From positions 62,001 to 126,000 of the IMG/VR virus record IMGVR_UViG_3300008259_005066: 64,000 bases of DNA; one strand, written 5' to 3'. A program made the translations under genes and the position numbers. This document shows, piece by piece, positions 4,366 through 13,179 of the stretch (within the stretch, counting starts at the first letter, position 1; each line of letters opens with the position of its first letter). Below the pieces are notes generated by a model. It was given only the letters and a program-made list of their open reading frames with translations, had not been told where the DNA came from and ran no database searches.

Positions 4366-5465
4366 TTAATTAGGGCACTGATCTCCGCGCACCACTGCGA
4401 TTTCGTAGCGATCTAAAGCGGGTGGGTTGGCGCTGTCAAGGTTAAATCCTGCTCGGCCCGCCCATCCAATATAGGTATTGATCTGCACCCCTTGATCCGT
4501 GGGTTGCGCCAAGCGTTCATTGTTCAGCATGCCCGCTTGCTGATTGTCCAGATCCGAATAACGATGGCATCCACGCCAGATCATGTTGCGATTTTGGTCC
4601 CAAAAAGTAAACAACACCGCGGGTCTGCTGTGTATCAAGTGTTGGCGCACCAAGGCCAGCGTTATGGAATCATCAAAAGCCGCGGTCCGGCTCCATCCAT
4701 GTGTGCCCGGTCGGGCCTTGATAGTGACGTAGCCTTGATATTGGCAATCACGGCGATATCTGCCCAGGCAGTCTCCGGCATTGGGTTTTGGCTCACCTGG
4801 CCCAGTGCTTCGTTGAGGCTTTGCACATAGGTGGGGCGCCAGCGCACCACGAAATTCAACTCCAGTTTCTTCTGGCGATCGTCACTGTAATACACCCTGG
4901 ATGGCAGTTTTTCTATGTCATAGGCCCGGTGCGGAAAATCCACCAAGACCTGGCGCAACAGAGCATCGCCATTTTTGCGGCTGTGATCTAGAGTTTGGGC
5001 CTGGGCAGTCAAACGATCGTTGTCTATGTGTCCGGGTTTTCGATGTTCGCCCAACAAACGATCAGCCAATCGGCTGCGGCGCACCCACACATCCACGGTC
5101 ATGACCACTAGACCGTTTTGTTGCTCTACGCTTTTGACTTCATAACTGTCCACGAAACCGGCCGCATGGGCTACCACTTCAGATCTTGTCAGTGTTCGAT
5201 CTTGCACTTCGCGTTCGGATGCTATGACCGACCCCACTGCTTGATCCACCGCGGCTCTCAGGGCCTGTATGCGGGCTTCTTCTGTGGTGCGCCCATGCCC
5301 TCGTGCGGTCACGAAGTAATGTGGATGGCCATCTTTGAGCAACCAAGGAACCACCTGTATGATGATGCTGACAGGATTGGGCTTCAGCGAATCAGGGGCA
5401 CTCTGTGCCACCACTGGCGCACTGACCAACAAGGTAGTGGCCAGTGCTAGAGCGACAATACGCAT
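4366..5465 (-). pseudogene. Secreted FlgT/LPP20-like protein with a frameshift near 4783 (ORFs 4662-5465 and 4366-4653 are one gene)
   Basis: Signal peptide; ARIQALRAAVDQAVGS motif; adding 1 nt at CAAAACCCAAT gives a continuous frame ...NPNAGDCLGRYRRDCQYQ...LVRQHLIHSRP. Confidence 0.7.
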
Positions 5466-6145
5466 TATCGCATCATTTCATTGAGTATGATCCGGCGCTG
5501 GCTGTTGTCTTTCCTATCCCAACGCACTGTTACCTGCACGTTGCGACCATCATTGATGATGCGGCCTTCTTTGAATACCACACCGCCCAAGATACCTGAA
5601 CGCTGGATAGATACTGTTTTGCGTAGATTGCTCTGGATGTTCACAGCATCGTTGCGCACGGCTGTGTTCTCTTCGCGATTGATCTCGCCAGATCGAGCGG
5701 CTTCTTCATCAGATGTTTCAAAAGCGAAATCCTGATTCTTGTTTGTGGCGAACTTGTTGGTCTTGTTGTCGCGAGCCTTTTCTAAATTCTTGGTCACTGT
5801 GTCCAGGAACCTTTTGGAATTGATGGTCTCAGGATGCAAGAACGAACTCATGCGATCTTTGGCCAGCACATAGGCCGCTTCGGTGGCCGATTGCACTGCA
5901 CGTTCCGAGTTGCCTTGAACTGGAGCATAGCCAGTGGCTTCTACAGCATCCAGGTCACCCAACAGTGAATAGATGACTTTGACACCTTCACGTTTGAAGT
6001 CCGATGCGGCACGTTGCTCAGAGATAGCCTGTTGTGGGCCTGGGTTCACTGTGCGATTGGGACCTACGTCTGTGGTCTTGGTAGAACTACAGGCCGAAAG
6101 ACCCAGGGCGGCGATCAAGGCCATGGCTAGGATTGACTTGTTCAT
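5465..6145 (-). CDS. Lipoprotein (LPP20-like)
   Basis: Start MNKSILAMALIAALGLSAC with lipobox LSAC. Confidence 0.75.
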   Translation of the reverse strand: MNKSILAMALIAALGLSACSSTKTTDVGPNRTVNPGPQQAISEQRAASDFKREGVKVIYSLLGDLDAVEATGYAPVQGNSERAVQSATEAAYVLAKDRMSSFLHPETINSKRFLDTVTKNLEKARDNKTNKFATNKNQDFAFETSDEEAARSGEINREENTAVRNDAVNIQSNLRKTVSIQRSGILGGVVFKEGRIINDGRNVQVTVRWDRKDNSQRRIILNEMMR

Positions 6146-6267
6146 TTGTTTTTGATCCATTCTCCGGCTTTGGAAAGATCTTGGCCGGCGCCGGAAACCG
6201 CGCCACCGATCGTGCCACAACCAACCAAAAGGCTGGCCACCAATACTGCAAAAACCAAGTGCTTCAT
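6142..6267 (-). CDS. 41-aa entericidin EcnA/B-like lipoprotein (not in ORF track)
   Basis: MKHLVFAVLVASLLVGCGTIGGAVSGAGQDLSKAGEWIKNK; SD AAGGAG; ATGA overlap with next gene. Confidence 0.75.
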   Translation of the reverse strand: MKHLVFAVLVASLLVGCGTIGGAVSGAGQDLSKAGEWIKNK

Positions 6268-6291
6268 GCGAACTCCTTAAAGATTGGTCAT

Positions 6292-6341
6292 AAAAAATCC
6301 TACTATGTGTGTATTATTACACAAGTAGGATTTTTGGTCTA
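6292..6341 (-). terminator. Long hairpin with U-tract after phasin, overlapping a sigma70-like promoter
   Basis: AAAAATCCTACT...AGTAGGATTTTTT inverted repeat plus inner TGTGTA/TACACA; TAGACC...TAATAAT. Confidence 0.6.
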
Positions 6342-6369
6342 GTGACCGGTTAACCGTTTTTTTACCAAA

Positions 6370-6645
6370 TTACTTGGTTTTGGTCTGGGATGTGTAGGCT
6401 TTCATGATACCCTCACCGAATTTGACATAGTCAAATTTAGCGGCTTCCTGGGCATGCTTGATGGTTTCTTGCACAACCGTGGTGCCAGCATCCAAAGTGG
6501 CCTTGGCGGCTTTTTTGGTATATTCGGATTGGTTGTCAATGAACTCATTCAATGCTGTGGCAATCTTTTCGTCAGTTACGAAAGTCTTGACAAATTGCTT
6601 CTTGCCGGTCTGGACTGCATCGATGGTCGCGTCTAATGTAAACAT
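6370..6645 (-). CDS. Phasin-like PHA granule-associated protein
   Basis: 91-aa amphipathic helical protein (IDAVQTGKKQFVKTFV...FIDNQSEYTKKAAK); SD AAGGAG; PhaR-like box upstream. Confidence 0.65.
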   Translation of the reverse strand: MFTLDATIDAVQTGKKQFVKTFVTDEKIATALNEFIDNQSEYTKKAAKATLDAGTTVVQETIKHAQEAAKFDYVKFGEGIMKAYTSQTKTK

Positions 6646-6704
6646 AGTGTTTCTCCTTGAGTTAAGCGAGTTTACTGCTAGAGACCCGCCCCATGCGGCA
6701 TCTC
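6646..6704 (-). promoter_or_regulatory. ROSE-like RNA thermometer in the phasin 5' UTR
   Basis: CUC(G)CUU pairs with AAGGAG with a bulged G; upstream hairpin GAGAU(G)CCG...CGGGUCUC. Confidence 0.65.
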
Positions 6705-6724
6705 CTTTGAACTATTATATATGA

Positions 6725-6749
6725 TAATTATTGCACTGCACAATAATTA
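6725..6749. promoter_or_regulatory. Palindromic operator, PhaR-box-like
   Basis: TAATTATTG-cactgca-CAATAATTA, containing TGCACTGCACAA. Confidence 0.65.
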
Positions 6750-6804
6750 ATCTACCCAGATAATAGTGTTTTGGCTAAGTAATTTTATCAAAATGGAGGA
6801 CTGC

Positions 6805-7185
6805 ATGGCTTGGACTGCTACACTCAACATCGTCAACAACACCCAATATAACCTAACCGTTAACCACAACACAGTGGGTGATTTAACTACTATCGCACCT
6901 GGTCAGTCATGGTCCTGGACCACATCTGATCCAAACAATACCAACGCCTTGCGTTTTTGGACAGTTCCGGAACAGTGGTATATGCAAGGTTCAGTGGCCT
7001 ATGGTCCCATGGCCGGAGTATACATGGACCGTGGCTGGATGGCACCCACGGATCAGACCATCCGCTTGGATGCCGATGTCAATGGCACAGGATTCTCACA
7101 GACCCAAAACGGTGGAGCCACTGTGGTGCCTTGGAACGGATTTGAATCCGGTGGCACGATCAATATGAAGTTTTCTAAGACTTGA
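6805..7185 (+). CDS. Hypothetical beta-rich protein
   Basis: SD GGAGG before ATG 6805; 126 aa, Thr/Asn/Trp-rich. Confidence 0.7.
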   Translation: MAWTATLNIVNNTQYNLTVNHNTVGDLTTIAPGQSWSWTTSDPNNTNALRFWTVPEQWYMQGSVAYGPMAGVYMDRGWMAPTDQTIRLDADVNGTGFSQTQNGGATVVPWNGFESGGTINMKFSKT

Positions 7186-7885
7186 TGTTGTAGGCCAAAC
7201 CAAATCGTTCTAGCCCTTTGATATAAGTCCATCCTAGATCCCATTCCCAGGGTTTTTGGCTGAGTTTAGGCGAAGCTGGATCAGCATGATGATTGTTGTG
7301 TAGTTCTTCACCACCGATGAAGAATGCCCAGGGCACAATATTAGTGGAATAGTCTTTGGTTTGAGTGTTCCTATAACCCCACCAGTGTCCCAGGCCGTTT
7401 ATGACGCCGGCTGCCCACAGTGGGATCCAAATCATCTGCCATAGCCAAGGCAACCAACCCCAGTCCCAGCCCCAAATCATGCAGTTGATAAAGAACATCA
7501 AGGTCACCCCCAACCAGTTGAATGGTGCATAGATGTGACGCTCTACCCAGTCATCGGGCGTGCCCACACCATACTGGTTGACCATGGCTTTGTCTTTTGC
7601 GGCCCAGGCATAGTAAAAAGCACCGCCTAATAAAATCTGCCAAATTCCTTCATTTTGCGGACTGTGCGGATCACCTTCCGCGTCAGTGAATCTGTGATGT
7701 TTTCTGTGTGTGGCCACCCACTGTTTGGTGACCATGCCTGTGGTGAGCCACAGCCAAAATCTCATGAAATGTGCCACACGTGGATCAAATGTCACACCTC
7801 TATGTGCCTGGCTACGATGCAAGTAAAGTGTGACACAAGCTATGGTGATGTGTGTCATCACCAGGATGTATATGAATAGGAGCAT
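7175..7885 (-). CDS. Delta-9-type fatty acid desaturase
   Basis: His boxes HRSQAH, HRKHH, HNNHH; TM segments; start taken at MLLFIY. Confidence 0.93.
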   Translation of the reverse strand: MLLFIYILVMTHITIACVTLYLHRSQAHRGVTFDPRVAHFMRFWLWLTTGMVTKQWVATHRKHHRFTDAEGDPHSPQNEGIWQILLGGAFYYAWAAKDKAMVNQYGVGTPDDWVERHIYAPFNWLGVTLMFFINCMIWGWDWGWLPWLWQMIWIPLWAAGVINGLGHWWGYRNTQTKDYSTNIVPWAFFIGGEELHNNHHADPASPKLSQKPWEWDLGWTYIKGLERFGLAYNIKS

Positions 7886-7889
7886 CAAA

Positions 7890-8504
7890 TTACTTATCCT
7901 TGATCCAGAAGCCCAATCTACTACCAGCAGGGCTGTGATACCACTGTGTACCGGGAGGCTGTTGTTGGCTGGATTCGGGCCATACAGGCCAGATCTCATC
8001 ACTATCATGATTGGCGAAATCATCATTGTATCGTAGATGCACTTCGATCACTGTATCGCCGATGTATTCTACGTTGATCCATTCCTGATAATACTTGAGA
8101 TCGTGCAACATCCCAGGAAAAGGCCGATCTAAATCCGTTCGACACCACCGTGAAAAACGATCCAATCTCCGAGGATCATCTCTGAAACCTTGCACCGTGA
8201 GATGCTGTTGGCCCCAATGGTAGTCCACTGACACATGCGGACCTTCGAGCACCTGGGTCCAGAAAAATCCATCGGGCACTGTGTCACTGTCACCTTTTTC
8301 CATCCACACGATCTGCGCACCTCGACTCATCATGCGGATGTTGGTGATAGGTCTTATCACATATTCTCCGGACCATGGTACGGGAATACCAGCCGGTCCA
8401 GCGGCGATGCCCTGTCTTCGTGCCACTATGAGTTTGTCATAGACCCACAACCACTGTGGTGGGCATGAGTCATACACGTCGCGATCGCTGACGAACTGCA
8501 TCAC
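7890..8504 (-). CDS. Hypothetical protein, ATP-grasp-like
   Basis: YDKL, VIRPITN, INVEY..VIEVHLR pattern. Confidence 0.55.
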   Translation of the reverse strand: MMQFVSDRDVYDSCPPQWLWVYDKLIVARRQGIAAGPAGIPVPWSGEYVIRPITNIRMMSRGAQIVWMEKGDSDTVPDGFFWTQVLEGPHVSVDYHWGQQHLTVQGFRDDPRRLDRFSRWCRTDLDRPFPGMLHDLKYYQEWINVEYIGDTVIEVHLRYNDDFANHDSDEIWPVWPESSQQQPPGTQWYHSPAGSRLGFWIKDK

Positions 8505-9130
8505 GCTCCCGAGGCCAACACTATCTTGCAGATATGTTCCAGCCGTTCTATGTGTTCAAACGCACGCCACGGTGAGGTATCGATAGCAACCACACCATGT
8601 CCACGGATGCCCACGATGTCAAAGGCGATGTTGCCTTGTTGATCTAATTGTAAATTTTCGTGGCAACGATCTGCCAGTTCTTGGCTTATAGGCGGCACAT
8701 CTCCCACATTGGGTGCTACCTTGGTATATCTACTGAGTTCTGGAAAGTCCGCAACAATGTCGCCTAAATTGATGCCACGGTGCATGGCCGCCACACAGTA
8801 TGTTGGATGCAAGTGAACTACCACACGCACCTCCGAGGCATGTTGTCCCATGCGTCGTTGCAGTCCAAAGTGCAAAGGAATCTCGCCGCTGGGTTTGAGA
8901 TTGGCGCTGATGTCAGTGTAATAATCTTCTCGCCAGAGAGACACTGGACCATTTTCAAGAATCATGATCTTCTTGAACTGGTCTGGTTGTAGGGTCTGCT
9001 TTCTCACTCCTGATGGTGTGATGTAGAAATGATCTCGATCATGATGCCGAATGCTGACGTTGCCGTCTCGACTGGTGATCCAGTTGCGGCGGTATGCCTC
9101 TACTAATGTTTCACATATGGTTTCTAACAT
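8501..9130 (-). CDS. Class II aldolase/adducin family protein
   Basis: DGNVS, ITPSG, PSGE..LH, HLH, GHG motifs. Confidence 0.9.
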   Translation of the reverse strand: MLETICETLVEAYRRNWITSRDGNVSIRHHDRDHFYITPSGVRKQTLQPDQFKKIMILENGPVSLWREDYYTDISANLKPSGEIPLHFGLQRRMGQHASEVRVVVHLHPTYCVAAMHRGINLGDIVADFPELSRYTKVAPNVGDVPPISQELADRCHENLQLDQQGNIAFDIVGIRGHGVVAIDTSPWRAFEHIERLEHICKIVLASGA

Positions 9131-9131
9131 T

Positions 9132-9326
9132 TTACCAGTGCCTTATGACATTTGCTATTATGAATCCGCAAGTGATCACATGGATCACTATCCAGAACGT
9201 TTTGAGGCAGAGTGCTACCCTTGCTTCTCTCATGGTCAAGATGGGCACTCTAGGGCGGTCTTCGTCAGTGTTGCCCATGACATGACCTGTGGCTCGAGCC
9301 CAGATGCGTTCAATGCTACGCATCAT
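9132..9326 (-). CDS. Small membrane protein
   Basis: C-terminal hydrophobic helix; translationally coupled to neighbours. Confidence 0.6.
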   Translation of the reverse strand: MMRSIERIWARATGHVMGNTDEDRPRVPILTMREARVALCLKTFWIVIHVITCGFIIANVIRHW

Positions 9327-9433
9327 TGCAGATTGATCCATATCGCAATGGCCAGACCTGCACACCATAATACCGAGATCACAGCGTATTTGATCTTTTT
9401 GCGTCGAGATACTCTAGACCAAGTGCTTGCCAT
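9323..9433 (-). CDS. 36-aa membrane peptide (not in ORF track)
   Basis: [36 protein letters not shown]; stop/start overlaps on both sides. Confidence 0.5.
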   Translation of the reverse strand: MASTWSRVSRRKKIKYAVISVLWCAGLAIAIWINLQ

Positions 9434-10710
9434 CAGTGGAACTGTTCTTCTTCTGTTGAGCCTTTGAGAGCCTGGGTGGAAGCATCAGCCTCCACTGTGG
9501 TAGTCACGCGGTCAAAGTAACTGGTTCCTACTTCTCTCTGATGTTTGACAGCTTCGAAACCACGGCTCGCATCCGCGAACTCACGCTCTTGTAACTCCAC
9601 GAAAGCAGACATGCCGTCCCTAGCATAGCCATGAGCAAGGTCAAACATGCCATGATTAAGAGCATGGAATCCAGCAAGTGTGATGAATTGAAAACGGTAA
9701 CCCATTGCTCCAAGTTCACGTTGGAAACGGCCAATTGTGTCTGCATCTAGGTTCTTCCTCCAGTTGAATGATGGTGAGCAGTTGTAGGCTAACATCTTGC
9801 CCGGAAACTGTCGGTGTATGGCTTCGGCGAATCGCTTGGCGAAGTCGAGGTCGGGTTTGCCTGTTTCGCACCATACGAGATCTGCGTAAGGACAGTAGGC
9901 CAGGGCTCTACTGACTGCTTGGTCGAATCCTGCTCGGGTCCGATAGAAACCCTCCACAGTTCTTTCACCAGTAAGAAAAGGAACGTCGTTAGGATCAATA
10001 TCTGAAGTGATAAGATCGCCGGCTTCGGCATCTGTTCTAGCAATAACAAGACTAGGCACTCCCATAACATCAGAAGCGAGACGAGCGGCAATAAGTTTAT
10101 TGATGGCTTCTCGTGTTGGAACAAGGACTTTTCCTCCCATGTGTCCGCATTTCTTTACGGACGCTAATTGATCTTCAAAATGCACACCTGCGGCCCCGGC
10201 TTCGATCATGGCCTTCATGAGTTCGAACGCATTGAGCACACCACCAAATCCTGCCTCTGCGTCAGCCACGATGGGTGCGAAAAAATCTCGATCTTCTTGG
10301 TCTTCCATCCAGGCGATCTGATCTGCTCTGGTAAAAGCATTGTTGATCCTACGCACCACTGCTGGCACAGAGTCTGCGGGATACAGGCTCTGATCAGGAT
10401 ACATGGCGCCAGCCAAGTTGGCATCAGCGGCCACTTGCCACCCACTCAAATATATAGCCTTCAAACCGGCCTTGACCTGTTGCAGGGCTTGCATGCCCGT
10501 GAGTGCTCCCAGGGTGTTGACATAATCTTGTTCATGTAGCAAACGCCACAATTTTTCGGCGCCACGCCGTGCCAGACTGTATTCTATGGGGTTGGAACCT
10601 TGCAAACGCACCACGTCCTCGGCTGAATAATCACGTTTGATTCCGGTCCAGCGCGGGTTTTCTGTCCATTCTTGTTGCAGTTTGTATACCTTCCATCTAC
10701 GGTCTTGCAT
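9433..10710 (-). CDS. aceA: Isocitrate lyase
   Basis: KKCGHM signature, [19 protein letters not shown]-terminal STEEEQF; SD AGGAGG before ATG 10710. Confidence 0.97.
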
Positions 10711-10746
10711 GGTGTTTCCTCCTGTTGAGCCAGGATATTTAGTTAC

Positions 10747-10759
10747 ATTGCAGTGCAAT
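10747..10759. promoter_or_regulatory. Palindromic operator, PhaR-box-like, between divergent aceA and the KKPAAK gene
   Basis: ATTGCAGTGCAAT perfect palindrome, same core as 6731-6743. Confidence 0.6.
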
Positions 10760-10817
10760 ATGCTAGGTTTCGATAATATGCTGTGTAAATACACTATATA
10801 AAACAAAGGAGACTGCA

Positions 10818-11051
10818 ATGCTCGCATTTTTAAAAAAGTTTTTTGGTTCCAAGCCCACCGTAAGTCCTTGCCCAGAGGCCCCTTACAAAGTTGAAGCACC
10901 ACAGACCACACCTGGTGTGATACCTATGTCCACACAATACTCCGAGGCTGCGGCGCCTAAGAAAAAACCGGCTGCCAAAAAACCTGCTGGGGAAAAGAAA
11001 CCTGCTGTCCGTGCCAAAGCAGTGAGAGCCAAGAAACCTGCTGCCAAATGA
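10818..11051 (+). CDS. Small protein with N-terminal amphipathic helix and histone H1-like KKPAAK tail
   Basis: [10 protein letters not shown]...[30 protein letters not shown]; SD AAGGAG. Confidence 0.8.
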
Positions 11052-11410
11052 GTTCCCACTGGGGTTATCATCTGATGTTGGATTGTAGTGGTTGTGATAT
11101 TGAATCTATATCCAACCGCGACAACATCTATAGATTCGTCAAGGATCTAGTGGATCGTATCGATATGACAGCACACGGAGAACCCGTGATCGAACATCTC
11201 CTGCCCGGAGACCCCAAACAGGGCTACAGCCTCATGCAGTTGATCACCACATCAAATATCTGTGGCCATTTCATGGAACTAGATGGCACGGCCTATTTTG
11301 ATGTGTTCAGTTGCAGAACTTTTGATATTGAAACTGCCAAGGCCGTGGTCGATGAATATTTCCATCCCAGAAAGATGCGTGTCAATTTCCTGACTAGACA
11401 CGCCGATTAG
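11048..11410 (+). CDS. speD: S-adenosylmethionine decarboxylase proenzyme family protein
   Basis: GYHLMLDCSGC, G.S...LITTSNICGHF, DVFSC. Confidence 0.8.
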   Translation: MSSHWGYHLMLDCSGCDIESISNRDNIYRFVKDLVDRIDMTAHGEPVIEHLLPGDPKQGYSLMQLITTSNICGHFMELDGTAYFDVFSCRTFDIETAKAVVDEYFHPRKMRVNFLTRHAD

Positions 11411-12188
11411 CGAAATAACTCCGCAAGTATCCTAGGCCTTTGTATTCGATCACAGCATCAGTCATGCTCATCACACTGCTGATGATCCTTTGTTTTTTAT
11501 CTGCGTCTTGGAACACATCCCGTAGTGGTATCATGTAGACTCTGATCAAAAACAGCGCGGCTTGACTGTGTATGGGTATAGTGGTCTGGCGTTCCGATCT
11601 GAACCACATGTCATCTATTGTCTCCGTGGACCATGCTTCTACACCACTGGGATGTCTGCTCAACGCAGGACGGTTGGCTATACTCCACACTGATCTTATG
11701 AAAGGACCCCGGGTAGTGATCATACGTGCGATGTGTCCAGATGCCTTGTTGACTATGTCAAAGTCTGGCACGGGTTCATGTATTTCAAGGAAAGTCTTGT
11801 TGACTTTGGTTTGAGGATCCCACCCCGATGGCAAGCACACACTCAGTATCTGTGCAGAGAGTTCGCCGGCACGATTGGGTGCCCATATCACAAAGTCTTC
11901 CTGTAGTGCCCGAGTTAGTTGCCACACAGGAGCATCTCCTTGGATCACAGGTGCAGTGGGATCATATTTTCTCAGTGCATCTACGGCTTGATAAACCAGT
12001 TCACGACTGGCTGAATCTCCATATACCGGATTGTAGTTGTTGAGTTTGGCGTCTTGATATCGATCAAAATCCCTGTCCGTGGTCAGTATGGACTCACCGG
12101 GTTGCCAAGGTCGCATGTGCGGCCGCATGGCATAGGGAACTTCTACATCAAAAGGGATATCACACAGTGACGTGCTTGGCGAAACCAT
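11394..12188 (-). CDS. DUF3445 / heme-dependent oxidative N-demethylase alpha-like protein
   Basis: LQEDFVI, CLPSGWDP..K, IHEPVP, RSERQT motifs; start uncertain. Confidence 0.75.
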   Translation of the reverse strand: MVSPSTSLCDIPFDVEVPYAMRPHMRPWQPGESILTTDRDFDRYQDAKLNNYNPVYGDSASRELVYQAVDALRKYDPTAPVIQGDAPVWQLTRALQEDFVIWAPNRAGELSAQILSVCLPSGWDPQTKVNKTFLEIHEPVPDFDIVNKASGHIARMITTRGPFIRSVWSIANRPALSRHPSGVEAWSTETIDDMWFRSERQTTIPIHSQAALFLIRVYMIPLRDVFQDADKKQRIISSVMSMTDAVIEYKGLGYLRSYFANRRV

Positions 12189-13179
12189 CTCTTGCTAGAT
12201 TTTTACCTTTGGCCTCGCACTGGATGTCAAACTGATCGGAGAAACCAGCGGCCCAGTCGTTCACAGCCGAATTCCAATAGAAATCCGAGTGGGCGCGGAG
12301 TTGCTGTTTTTTATGACCTCGTGCAAGAAGTCCAGCAAGATCTGGGCGAACTCGGGGATCATGATCAACAAGAATATCTTCGCGACTAACACTGTAATGC
12401 ATAGCAGGGCGAACGTCACGCCAAGACTCAACCACACGCTGAACACGATCATCTTGGGGATCGATGTATTCTCCTGTTTTGACCCAATGGTGATGAATGT
12501 CCAGCACAAGAGCCACGTTATCAGCCACAAGCAAAGTAAGGTCCAAACCATTTGATATCTCGTCGTTTTCGATAGTTATGAGATTGCGTGCCTCGGGGCT
12601 AAGTTTGCCCAGGCTACGCAAGAATTTTTCAGGCCCACCCTTGCCCGACAGGTGAACATTGATCTTGAAGCCATGATCATGCCAGGTGGCGCCATAGCCC
12701 ATCCAGCGGGCCATGTCTGCATGATATTCAAACTCTTGGATGCTACGTTCCACGATGCCGTCGTTCTCTGATGCTAACACACAGAACTGTCCAGGATGGA
12801 ATGAAAGTCTTACTCCCAACTCTCGGGCACGGGCACCCACAGGAGCAAAGATCTTTTCTAGGTGTCGTTGGATGTCTGCTTGTTGCCACCAGTCAATCCA
12901 GTTGGGTTCTGTGTAGCCTTGTAGCATTTCAGACCCCAGTCGAACCATGCGTAGATGATGAGGTAGACTGCCCACACGTTCTACCATGTTGAGAGCGGCC
13001 TGTGCATTGTGATTCATGATGTCCCACTGGCGCTGTTCTGCTTGGTCTGCATGCTCACGCAACCAACGCATGGTAGTGCTCCGCCCATTGAGTTCACGAT
13101 TCTTGGCATTGACTTTCATGCCAGCAGTTTCACTGGGATCGTCTAACCATTTACAACAAAAACCAATTCGAGCAGTCAT
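12160..13179 (-). CDS. uvsE: UV-damage endonuclease
   Basis: RIGFCCK, RLSFHPGQF, IENDE, LDIHHH, AHSD, EAKGK. Confidence 0.93.
   Translation of the reverse strand: MTARIGFCCKWLDDPSETAGMKVNAKNRELNGRSTTMRWLREHADQAEQRQWDIMNHNAQAALNMVERVGSLPHHLRMVRLGSEMLQGYTEPNWIDWWQQADIQRHLEKIFAPVGARARELGVRLSFHPGQFCVLASENDGIVERSIQEFEYHADMARWMGYGATWHDHGFKINVHLSGKGGPEKFLRSLGKLSPEARNLITIENDEISNGLDLTLLVADNVALVLDIHHHWVKTGEYIDPQDDRVQRVVESWRDVRPAMHYSVSREDILVDHDPRVRPDLAGLLARGHKKQQLRAHSDFYWNSAVNDWAAGFSDQFDIQCEAKGKNLARDGFAKHVTV

What the first reader, a model, noticed from the sequence alone, without database searches (positions are those of the whole stretch)
6370..11051. Candidate PHA-granule hijacking regulon: phasin, isocitrate lyase and a granule-DNA linker behind PhaR-type operators
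Seen: the palindromic core TTGCA(C/G)TGCA lies in two intergenic regions, upstream of the phasin-like gene (6725-6749, inside a 9-bp perfect inverted repeat) and between divergent aceA and the KKPAAK gene (10747-10759, 5 nt from the aceA TAAATA promoter). Known: proteobacterial PhaR represses phasin genes through TGC-rich boxes and is titrated off DNA by PHB. The 6732-6743 sequence TGCACTGCACAA fits the TGCRNYGCASMA consensus I recall for Bradyrhizobium PhaR. PHB breakdown yields acetyl-CoA, whose assimilation needs the glyoxylate shunt. Inference: the phage senses host carbon stores through host PhaR and then turns on genes that coat granules and route the carbon into biosynthesis. Caveats: a third copy of the core lies inside a CDS (5891-5902), and no malate synthase or depolymerase is in this window.
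Basis: partly seen in the sequence, partly recalled or inferred. Interest (0 to 1): 0.88.

Follow-up and report, generated by a model that had tools for sequence, protein, structure and literature searches.

The report
Host PhaR operators on phage genes
A clade of uncultured freshwater jumbo phages carries, in front of a very conserved small helical-protein gene and of its isocitrate lyase gene, the same DNA box that Burkholderiales bacteria use to switch on storage-granule (PHB) genes. These phages therefore probably read the host's carbon-store sensor PhaR. The small protein itself is not a demonstrable phasin.

Summary
The TGCA(C/G)TGCA core lies at 5891, 6731 and 10748, and the 9-bp inverted repeat is at 6725-6733/6741-6749.

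One genome alone gives only marginal statistics. Comparison with relatives decides it:
- 43 of 71 distinct relatives of the 91-aa gene carry TGC-N3-GCA about 90 nt upstream of the ATG.
- Their consensus TATGTTGC-RNY-GCAACATA matches the boxes upstream of all 32 sampled Burkholderiaceae phasin genes.
- It also matches the footprinted Herbaspirillum PhbF site TG[N]TGC[N]3GCAA.
- 11 of 19 phage aceA promoters carry the box directly upstream of a TAAATA element.
- Five near-complete relatives encode no PhaR.

Four lake metatranscriptomes each hold a perfect-identity contig of 6291-6706 at most. That places the transcription start near 6706 and the box centre at -30.

Not supported:
- Phasin homology. 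All hits are sub-threshold and no better than reversed-sequence controls.
- The KKPAAK gene as an operator target. Its closest relatives lack the box.
- The third copy at 5891, which is not conserved.

Most likely mechanism: host PhaR represses both genes until PHB titrates it. This is a new variant of phage genes wired to a host nutrient regulator. The gene's leader also resembles a ROSE thermometer.

The parts
6725..6749 (.). Operator 1. A 9-bp perfect inverted repeat with AT-rich arms around the core TGCACTGCA (6732-6740). It overlaps the -35 regions of both divergent promoters.
   Evidence: Homologous boxes lie at -86..-110 from the ATG in 43 of 71 relatives.
6714..6743 (-). Sigma-70-type promoter of the 91-aa gene: -35-like TTGTGC (6743-6738), 18-nt spacer, -10 TATAAT (6719-6714). 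The start site is about 6706-6708.
   Evidence: Sequence. The same architecture recurs in relatives. RNA contigs end at 6698, 6698, 6699 and 6706 in four metatranscriptomes.
6646..6707 (-). Structured 5' leader. It has a 5'-proximal hairpin, then a weak hairpin CUC(G)CUU/AAGGAG that sequesters the Shine-Dalgarno sequence, as in ROSE thermometers.
   Evidence: Rfam ROSE_3 full-length match at 26.9 bits, E 5e-4, below the gathering score of 43. The same hit occurs in 4 of 5 relatives. MFE structure. 8 of 10 pairs of hairpin 1 show compensatory changes.
6370..6645 (-). 91-aa all-helical protein. It belongs to a large conserved family seen only in viral or unassigned metagenomic records, the long ones being freshwater jumbo-phage contigs. 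Function unknown; phasin-like in composition only.
   Evidence: family. (three helices, pLDDT 82). (no significant phasin homology).
6293..6335 (.). Bidirectional intrinsic terminator: 12-bp perfect stem flanked by A and T runs. It ends the monocistronic mRNA.
   Evidence: The longest RNA contig stops at 6291.
10747..10759 (.). Operator 2, the perfect palindrome ATTGCAGTGCAAT. It lies 5 nt upstream of the aceA TAAATA element.
   Evidence: An equivalent box lies at -38..-47 in 11 of 19 distinct phage aceA promoters.
10736..10741 (-). TAAATA promoter element of aceA, the phage-wide T4-late-like -10 class.
   Evidence: This is the most enriched non-SD motif upstream of genes in the genome, present at 41 of 287 genes.
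9433..10710 (-). aceA, isocitrate lyase, 425 aa, with the KKCGH motif.
   Evidence: Pfam ICL E 1.8e-107. 74-81% identity to Burkholderiales ICLs. 58 viral loci.
10818..11051 (+). 77-aa protein with an N-terminal amphipathic helix and a KKPAAK lysine-rich tail. It is a conserved phage family with its own TAAATA element at 10786-10791, and is probably not an operator target.
5890..5901 (.). Third copy, ATTGCACTGCAC, inside the 226-aa lipoprotein ORF. Probably chance or lineage-specific.
   Evidence: There is no positional enrichment in relatives' downstream genes.
6737..6764 (+). Promoter-like site TGCACA-16-GATAAT for the divergent 126-aa ORF (6805-7185). Its -35 lies inside operator 1.
   Evidence: The ORF has no family hit.

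Best explanation
The two intergenic palindromes are operators of the PhaR (PhbF/AniA) type, read by the PhaR protein of a Burkholderiales-like host.

Operator 1 is centred about 30 nt upstream of the start site of a sigma-70-type promoter and overlaps its -35 region. That promoter drives a monocistronic, abundant mRNA for a 91-aa helical protein. Operator 2 abuts the upstream edge of the phage-type TAAATA promoter of aceA.

In a host without free PHB surface, PhaR sits on both boxes and blocks RNA polymerase. In a host holding PHB granules, PhaR is titrated onto the polymer and both genes are expressed. The phage thus makes isocitrate lyase, and a very abundant small protein of unknown activity, only in cells with a carbon store whose breakdown yields acetyl-CoA.

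Shown here: the boxes, their conservation and position, their identity in form with host phasin operators, the transcript boundaries, and the lack of a phage PhaR.

Inferred: PhaR binding, release by PHB, the metabolic benefit, and any granule binding by the 91-aa protein. Translation of that protein is probably gated further by a ROSE-like leader that hides the ribosome-binding site.
For: 1. Conservation. TTGC-N3-GCAA is perfect in 27 of 71 distinct loci, and TGC-N3-GCA in 43 of 71, within the 100 nt before the ATG. About 0.1 (8 fixed bases) and 1.7 (6 fixed bases) per bin are expected, and no other bin is enriched.
2. Identity with host operators. All 32 Burkholderiaceae Phasin_2 genes have such boxes, usually two about 56 bp apart, with consensus TTTGTTGC-RNY-GCAACAAA. 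The phage consensus is TATGTTGC-RNY-GCAACATA. The R-N-Y spacer holds in 45 of 47 phage sites and 55 of 56 host sites. Base frequencies in the columns not used for selection correlate at r = 0.77.
3. Published footprints: Herbaspirillum PhbF TG[N]TGC[N]3GCAA (PMC3206438); Bradyrhizobium TGCRNYGCASMA, overlapping or flanking the -35 (PMC6201568); Sinorhizobium YGCRNYGCR with AT-rich arms, and an ICL-family protein in the PhaR-repressed module (PMC12542648).
4. aceA. The box is exact in 11 of 19 distinct phage aceA promoters and within one mismatch in 15 of 19, always directly upstream of TAAATA. Bacterial aceA upstream regions carry the box in 31 of 61 loci, about 2.5-fold over their flanks.
5. 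Host. aceA's best bacterial hits are Burkholderiales. PhaR is found in 55 of 61 and Phasin_2 in 58 of 61 genomes of that family.
6. No PHB_acc_N domain in five relatives that are 91-100% complete.
7. RNA contigs at 100% identity span only 6291-6706, in four lake metatranscriptomes.
Against: - No binding data exist.
- In the window itself site 1 has one degenerate half (GTGC on the gene strand). Site 2 has non-consensus flanks and scores poorly with the host matrix.
- Several relatives carry GCC instead of the invariant GCA, or a 3-nt insertion. That fits a promoter element or a different protein as well as a weakened PhaR site.
- About half of the aceA boxes break the R-N-Y rule.
- The host is inferred only from aceA similarity; Xanthomonadales score equally at 78%.
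- The regulated 91-aa protein shows no real phasin homology.
- The phages carry no depolymerase or malate synthase, so the PHB-to-biosynthesis route would depend on host enzymes.
- The RNA libraries could contain DNA, although the sharp ends at the predicted start and terminator argue against it.
Confidence: 0.62

Rival explanations
1. The box is the operator of a phage-encoded regulator unrelated to PhaR, which controls a small set of phage genes. The likeness to PhaR sites is convergent.
For: GCC variants and 3-nt insertions occur in some relatives, and R-N-Y is broken at about half of the aceA boxes. Extra box-like sites lie upstream of unrelated genes in relatives. Many relatives have a second conserved palindrome, TTAGTGA-N4-TCACTAA, nearby, so phage- or host-specific regulators clearly act here.
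Against: Core, spacer rule and flanks all coincide with host phasin operators. No PhaR-type DNA-binding domain is present in five near-complete genomes. The same box is enriched upstream of bacterial aceA. The promoter of the 91-aa gene is of host sigma-70 type.
Confidence: 0.15
2. The palindrome is mainly a promoter element: a -35-like TTGC plus an upstream or spacer element for host RNA polymerase or a phage sigma factor. It is not a repressor site.
For: The left half supplies TTGCNN at the right distance (17-18 nt) from TATAAT or TACAAT. In aceA promoters it is fused to TAAATA. TAAATA is a genome-wide phage promoter element.
Against: Only two intergenic boxes exist in 209 kb, against 41 TAAATA promoters, so the box is not part of the general promoter. 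Dyad symmetry and the R-N-Y rule are not expected of a -35 element.
Confidence: 0.08
3. The boxes are inert relics, captured together with host genes or promoters (aceA from a Burkholderiales host) and not used by the phage.
For: Host aceA upstream regions carry similar boxes, so aceA may have arrived with one.
Against: The box is kept at a fixed position across lineages whose proteins have diverged to about 58% identity and whose flanking intergenic sequence has changed. The 91-aa gene has no detectable host homologue from which a promoter could have come.
Confidence: 0.07

Closest known systems
PhaR/PhbF/AniA-phaP operator system of PHB-accumulating proteobacteria (Herbaspirillum seropedicae, Cupriavidus necator, Bradyrhizobium, Sinorhizobium)
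   Same: TGC-RNY-GCA core with TG(T)T...A(C)A flanks. The position overlaps or flanks the -35. The downstream gene encodes a small, abundant, all-helical protein. An isocitrate-lyase-family gene lies in the PhaR-repressed set of S. meliloti.
   Different: It sits on a lytic jumbo-phage genome. There is a single box per promoter instead of the usual two flanking the -35/-10. At aceA it is combined with a phage-type TAAATA promoter. The regulator is not encoded by the same genome. The regulated protein is not a Phasin_2 member.
Cyanophage genes under host nutrient regulators: Pho boxes/PhoB at pstS and phoA, and NtcA sites in cyanophage promoters (from my own knowledge, not checked in papers here)
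   Same: A lytic phage places auxiliary metabolic genes under a host stress or nutrient transcription factor, so expression follows host physiology.
   Different: The sensor here is a repressor titrated by an intracellular storage polymer, not an activator of a two-component or 2-oxoglutarate system. The host group is freshwater Betaproteobacteria-like. The main target is a protein of unknown function.
Phasins (Pfam Phasin_2 PF09361, TIGR01841; PhaP1)
   Same: Small, alanine/lysine/threonine-rich, all alpha-helical, very highly expressed, behind a PhaR box. Phasin is the commonest sub-threshold family among members: 12 of 48 in Pfam and 6 of 48 in NCBIfam.
   Different: About half the length. 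No hit reaches a curated cut-off. hhalign probability is 0.5%. The host-phasin HMM scores no better than on reversed sequences.
ROSE RNA thermometers (Rfam ROSE_3, RF02523)
   Same: A full-length alignment covers exactly the mapped leader. There is a 5' hairpin of near-identical sequence, a UYGCU stretch pairing with the Shine-Dalgarno sequence, and a bulged G.
   Different: Scores of 27-36.5 bits fall below the gathering score of 43. The downstream gene is not a small heat-shock protein. The family was not found in the 41 host-like genomes searched, though that search was under-powered.
PhaM / PhaF granule-nucleoid linkers (from my own knowledge)
   Same: The KKPAAK protein has a lysine/proline/alanine-rich histone-H1-like tail.
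   Different: It is only 77 aa. It has no phasin or PhaC-binding domain, only an N-terminal amphipathic helix. The box is not conserved upstream of it.

Membership tests
PhaR-type operator | Dyad core TGC-N3-GCA | tested here: met
   Sites 6732-6740 and 10749-10757. 43 of 71 relatives of the 91-aa gene and 11 of 19 phage aceA promoters.
PhaR-type operator | R-N-Y in the 3-nt spacer, and TG(N) / (N)CA flanks as in TG[N]TGC[N]3GCAA and TGCRNYGCASMA | tested here: met
   R-N-Y in 45 of 47 phage sites and 55 of 56 host sites. Flanks T .96, G .80, T .80. r = 0.77 with host columns. Window site 1 fits TGCRNYGCASMA. Window site 2 flanks are non-consensus. aceA boxes keep R-N-Y in only 6 of 11.
PhaR-type operator | Overlaps or flanks the -35/-10 of the regulated promoter | tested here: met
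   The box centre at 6736 is about 30 nt upstream of the RNA 5' ends at 6698-6706. It overlaps the -35 of both divergent promoters. At aceA it lies 5 nt from TAAATA.
PhaR-type operator | Bound by PhaR and released when PhaR binds PHB | not testable with these tools
   Needs EMSA or footprinting and reporters in phaR and phaC backgrounds.
Phasin (Pfam Phasin_2 / TIGR01841) | Score over the curated cut-off, or significant profile-profile match | tested here: not met
   The window protein has no hit. Best member E 8e-4, below the cut-off. hhalign probability 0.5%. HMM 12.2 bits against 9.6 for reversed sequences. Foldseek uninformative.
Phasin (Pfam Phasin_2 / TIGR01841) | Binds PHB granules | not testable with these tools
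   Needs localisation or granule pull-down.
Isocitrate lyase (PF00463) | Family score and catalytic KKCGH motif | tested here: met
   E 1.8e-107 and 360 bits. KKCGH is in the translation.
PhaM/PhaF-type granule-DNA linker | Granule- or synthase-binding domain plus lysine-rich DNA-binding tail | tested here: not met
   The tail is present, but there is no domain hit. The protein is 77 aa with only an amphipathic N-terminal helix. The box is absent upstream in the close relatives L277-L280.
ROSE RNA thermometer (RF02523) | Rfam gathering score | tested here: not met
   26.9 bits in the window and 28.1-36.5 in relatives, against 43.
ROSE RNA thermometer (RF02523) | UYGCU opposite the Shine-Dalgarno sequence with a bulged G, preceded by a 5' hairpin | tested here: met
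   Hairpin 1 covaries at 8 of 10 pairs.
ROSE RNA thermometer (RF02523) | Temperature-dependent translation | not testable with these tools
   Needs reporter assays at different temperatures.

The most novel reading that the evidence does not exclude
A whole clade of 200-365-kb freshwater phages senses the host's PHB store through host PhaR. It uses that signal to time two things: a glyoxylate-shunt enzyme, and a very abundant new small granule-associated protein that works as a non-homologous 'phage phasin'. Translation of that protein is gated further by a ROSE-like RNA thermometer. This would be the first case of a virus reading a bacterial storage-polymer sensor.
Probability: 0.25. Interest if true: 0.88.

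Novelty: new variant of a known kind. Interest (0 to 1): 0.72.

Why it matters
Lytic phages are known to wire auxiliary metabolic genes to host phosphate and nitrogen regulators. A link to the carbon-storage sensor PhaR has not turned up in the literature I could search.

If PhaR control is real, infection outcome in abundant freshwater Betaproteobacteria would depend on whether the cell holds PHB. Phage isocitrate lyase would then be an inducible way to turn stored carbon into biosynthetic precursors.

The finding also gives a directly testable handle on one of the most conserved genes in this uncultured jumbo-phage clade, and the only one in this 5.9-kb stretch recovered as a full-length RNA contig. 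The promoter, operator, structured leader and terminator are all mapped. It also offers a sequence-based host predictor for these phages, namely PhaR-box promoters.

Tried and rejected
- INPHARED searches. Megablast of 5400-11500 and tblastn of the 91-aa protein found no isolate relative. Only Phage C48C1 has a phage aceA, at 59% identity.
- Phasin homology. Tested with Pfam, PHROGs and NCBIfam scans, hhalign against 32 host phasins, HMM searches with shuffled and reversed controls, a PDB profile search that hit only designed helical bundles, Foldseek against AFDB clusters with E no better than 0.26, and the ESM Atlas, where a phasin cluster appeared only at rank 95 with score 0.88. All were rejected as evidence of homology.
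- Single-genome statistics. The host-matrix scan of the genome is not significant on its own. TTGC-N3-GCAA with up to one mismatch gives 122 hits, mostly coding.
- The 15-mer TGTTGCNNNGCAACA with up to 2 mismatches in five complete relatives gave 24-42 hits against 10-29 for the reversed control. That is too noisy to define a regulon. A few extra intergenic boxes were looked at but not resolved.
- KKPAAK as a regulon member was rejected after reading four close and four distant relatives.
- A phage-encoded PhaR, malate synthase or PHB depolymerase: none found in five near-complete relatives, and no PhaR or Phasin_2 in the window's own record.
- ROSE_3 in 41 host-like genomes: nothing, but the search scored only 92 candidates per genome and rang in no control. 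The origin of ROSE_3 could not be traced in papers.

Full report
**What the window is**

The window is bases 62,001-126,000 of a 209,518-bp linear IMG/VR virus record, 48% G+C and about 60% complete. A near-identical record is 315,778 bp and 91% complete. Relatives reach 331-353 kb, and two of them have terminal repeats. No isolate in INPHARED is related.

The neighbourhood is rich in metabolic genes:
- ClpP and a radical SAM protein
- fatty-acid desaturase
- class II aldolase
- isocitrate lyase
- AdoMet decarboxylase
- a HODM-like protein
- UvdE

**Checking the observation**

- The 11-mer ATTGCACTGCA occurs three times in the whole record, all within 4.9 kb. By my calculation about 0.1 copies of a given 11-mer are expected.
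- TGCRNYGCASMA occurs once, at 6732-6743.

Taken alone this is only marginal. Two of 100 window shuffles reach the count of the 10-mer. A matrix trained on host operators does not lift the sites above shuffled genomes.

**Comparative evidence for the 91-aa gene**

The 91-aa protein belongs to a large, strongly conserved family. There are 892 clusters at 90% identity and 188 at 50%. All members are about 70-115 aa and none has a name. The Atlas clusters nearest the protein are 100% viral, and the long contigs that carry it (157-365 kb) are freshwater jumbo-phage contigs.

In 71 distinct loci the 100 nt before the ATG hold a perfect TTGC-N3-GCAA in 27 and TGC-N3-GCA in 43. No other 100-nt bin within 6 kb either side is enriched.

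The aligned upstream regions share one architecture:
- the box, with consensus TATGTTGC-RNY-GCAACATA
- a -10 hexamer (TATAAT or TACAAT) placed so that the left half of the box is the -35
- a conserved leader
- a strong Shine-Dalgarno sequence

**Is it a PhaR box?**

Published footprints give three related motifs:
- TG[N]TGC[N]3GCAA for Herbaspirillum PhbF (PMC3206438).
- TGCRNYGCASMA for Bradyrhizobium PhaR, overlapping or flanking the -35 (PMC6201568).
- YGCRNYGCR with AT-rich arms for Sinorhizobium (PMC12542648).

As an independent test I took the genomes whose aceA is closest to the phage's, which are Burkholderiales at 74-81% identity. I then sampled 61 genomes of that family.
- 58 have Phasin_2 and 55 have PhaR.
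- All 32 phasin genes examined carry TGC-N3-GCA upstream, usually two boxes about 56 bp apart, with consensus TTTGTTGC-RNY-GCAACAAA.
- Phage and host boxes agree in the columns that were not used to find them. The R-N-Y spacer holds in 45 of 47 phage sites and 55 of 56 host sites, the flanking T-G-T matches, and r = 0.77.

Five near-complete phage relatives encode no PHB_acc_N domain. Any PhaR acting here must therefore be the host's.

**aceA**

Fifty-eight viral loci encode a relative. Nineteen distinct loci have aceA behind its own intergenic region.
- 11 carry an exact TGC-N3-GCA at -38..-47, mostly with TGTTGC/GCAACA flanks and directly upstream of TAAATA.
- 4 more differ by one base, GCC in place of GCA.

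TAAATA is the most enriched non-SD motif upstream of genes in this genome. It is present at 41 of 287 genes, 20-40 nt before the ATG. aceA therefore uses the phage's own T4-late-like promoter class with the box fused to its upstream edge.

Bacterial aceA upstream regions carry the box in 31 of 61 loci, about 2.5-fold over their flanks. That includes TTGTTGCGACGCAC at -108 in the best-matching genome. In S. meliloti an ICL-family protein lies in the PhaR-repressed module. The PhaR-aceA link thus looks like a host trait that the phage retained.

**RNA evidence**

Five lake metatranscriptomes hold 5-7% of the words of 5400-11300. In the four that I laid on the stretch, each run gave one long contig with zero differences, running from 6291, 6339, 6355 or 6395 up to 6698-6706, plus a single 172-nt piece at 8728-8899. 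Everything else was short pieces with mismatches, from relatives or other organisms.

The upper ends sit 8-16 nt below the TATAAT at 6714-6719. The lowest end sits at the foot of the perfect 12-bp terminator stem at 6293-6335.

The gene is therefore a monocistronic, well-represented transcript starting near 6706, and the box centre (6736) lies at about -30. Caveats: these are assembled contigs, the runs were chosen with this stretch, and DNA carry-over cannot be formally excluded.

**The 91-aa protein**

AlphaFold predicts three helices (2-22, 26-70, 73-89) with mean pLDDT 82.

Phasin is the most frequent sub-threshold family among members, at 12 of 48 in Pfam and 6 of 48 in NCBIfam. But:
- no hit reaches a cut-off
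- hits fall on different parts of the profile
- hhalign against host phasins gives 0.5% probability
- a host-phasin HMM scores 12.2 bits on real sequences, 9.6 on reversed and 7.8 on shuffled
- structure and PDB searches return only generic helical hairpins

So the protein is phasin-like in composition and in regulation, not by demonstrable descent. Granule binding is a hypothesis.

**The KKPAAK protein**

This is a conserved phage family with 131 hits. It has an N-terminal amphipathic helix, a conserved EAPYKVE stretch and a lysine-rich tail.

In relatives it lies divergent from the desaturase and 91-aa gene cluster. In the four closest contexts it has only a TAAATAG element and no box. A distant subgroup has decayed box-like sequences.

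In the window it sits beside the box because the aceA block is inserted there. It also has its own TAAATA at 10786-10791. I therefore assign operator 2 to aceA.

**The third copy**

The copy at 5890-5901 encodes part of a lipoprotein. It has no counterpart in relatives. It is treated as chance or lineage-specific.

**The leader**

The 61-nt leader matches Rfam ROSE_3 over the model's full length at 26.9 bits, E 5e-4, against a gathering score of 43. The same hit appears at the same place in 4 of 5 relatives, at 28-36.5 bits.

The fold is a 5' hairpin plus a weak hairpin in which CUC(G)CUU pairs with AAGGAG and leaves a bulged G. Hairpin 1 has compensatory changes at 8 of 10 pairs. This looks like a ROSE-type translational gate, but that is untested, and the downstream gene is not a heat-shock protein.

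**Verdict**

That core is host PhaR operators on a phage small-protein gene and on aceA. The 'phasin' and 'granule-DNA linker' labels are not supported. The metabolic story remains inference, because the phages carry no depolymerase or malate synthase.

Noticed in passing
window 6646-6707 (-): The leader of the 91-aa gene resembles a ROSE_3 RNA thermometer. The hits are sub-threshold but full-length and recur in relatives. The Shine-Dalgarno sequence pairs with a UYGCU stretch and leaves a bulged G. The 5' hairpin covaries.
   Followed up: partly
L018, L020, L021, L027, L033 and many others, about 20-40 nt upstream of the box (for example L018:5880-5900); absent from the window: A second conserved palindrome, TTAGTGA-N4-TCACTAA (FNR-like spacing), accompanies the PhaR-like box in many relatives. 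It also lies beside extra boxes in L271, L270, L150 and L281. It may be the site of another regulator.
   Followed up: no
whole genome; for example window 10736-10741 (-) and 10786-10791 (+): (C/A)TAAATA(C/T) is the most enriched non-SD motif upstream of genes: 41 of 287 genes, 20-40 nt before the ATG. It looks like a phage-wide T4-late-like promoter element.
   Followed up: partly
window 6142-6267 (-): A 41-aa lipoprotein ORF just downstream of the terminator matches the entericidin EcnA/B family (E 1.2e-4, 22.4 bits against a cut-off of 23.3). Two further secreted or lipoprotein ORFs follow it (5465-6145 and 4662-5465). The block is syntenic in relatives.
   Followed up: no
window 7175-9368 and 11048-13179: A dense cluster of metabolic genes surrounds aceA: fatty-acid desaturase, a phrog_3577 protein, class II aldolase, AdoMet decarboxylase, a haem-dependent oxidative N-demethylase-like protein and UvdE. 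Compared with relatives, the block from 6805 to 10710 looks like an insertion between the 91-aa gene and the KKPAAK gene.
   Followed up: partly
genome 126445-126463 (445 nt beyond the window end; L276:1646-1664): The third-best hit of the host PhaR matrix in the genome is AATGGTGCCGTGCAAAATA at 15.5 bits. It lies at the start of a 390-aa ORF.
   Followed up: no
L270:1283-1297 and L271:1504-1518: Near-consensus boxes (TGTTGCATTGCAATA and TGTTGCACTGCAAAA) lie in other intergenic regions of complete relatives. One is downstream of ClpP. The other is upstream of a 136-aa ORF that looks to me like a gamma-glutamyl cyclotransferase (by eye, no family search). The regulon may be larger in some phages.
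   Followed up: partly
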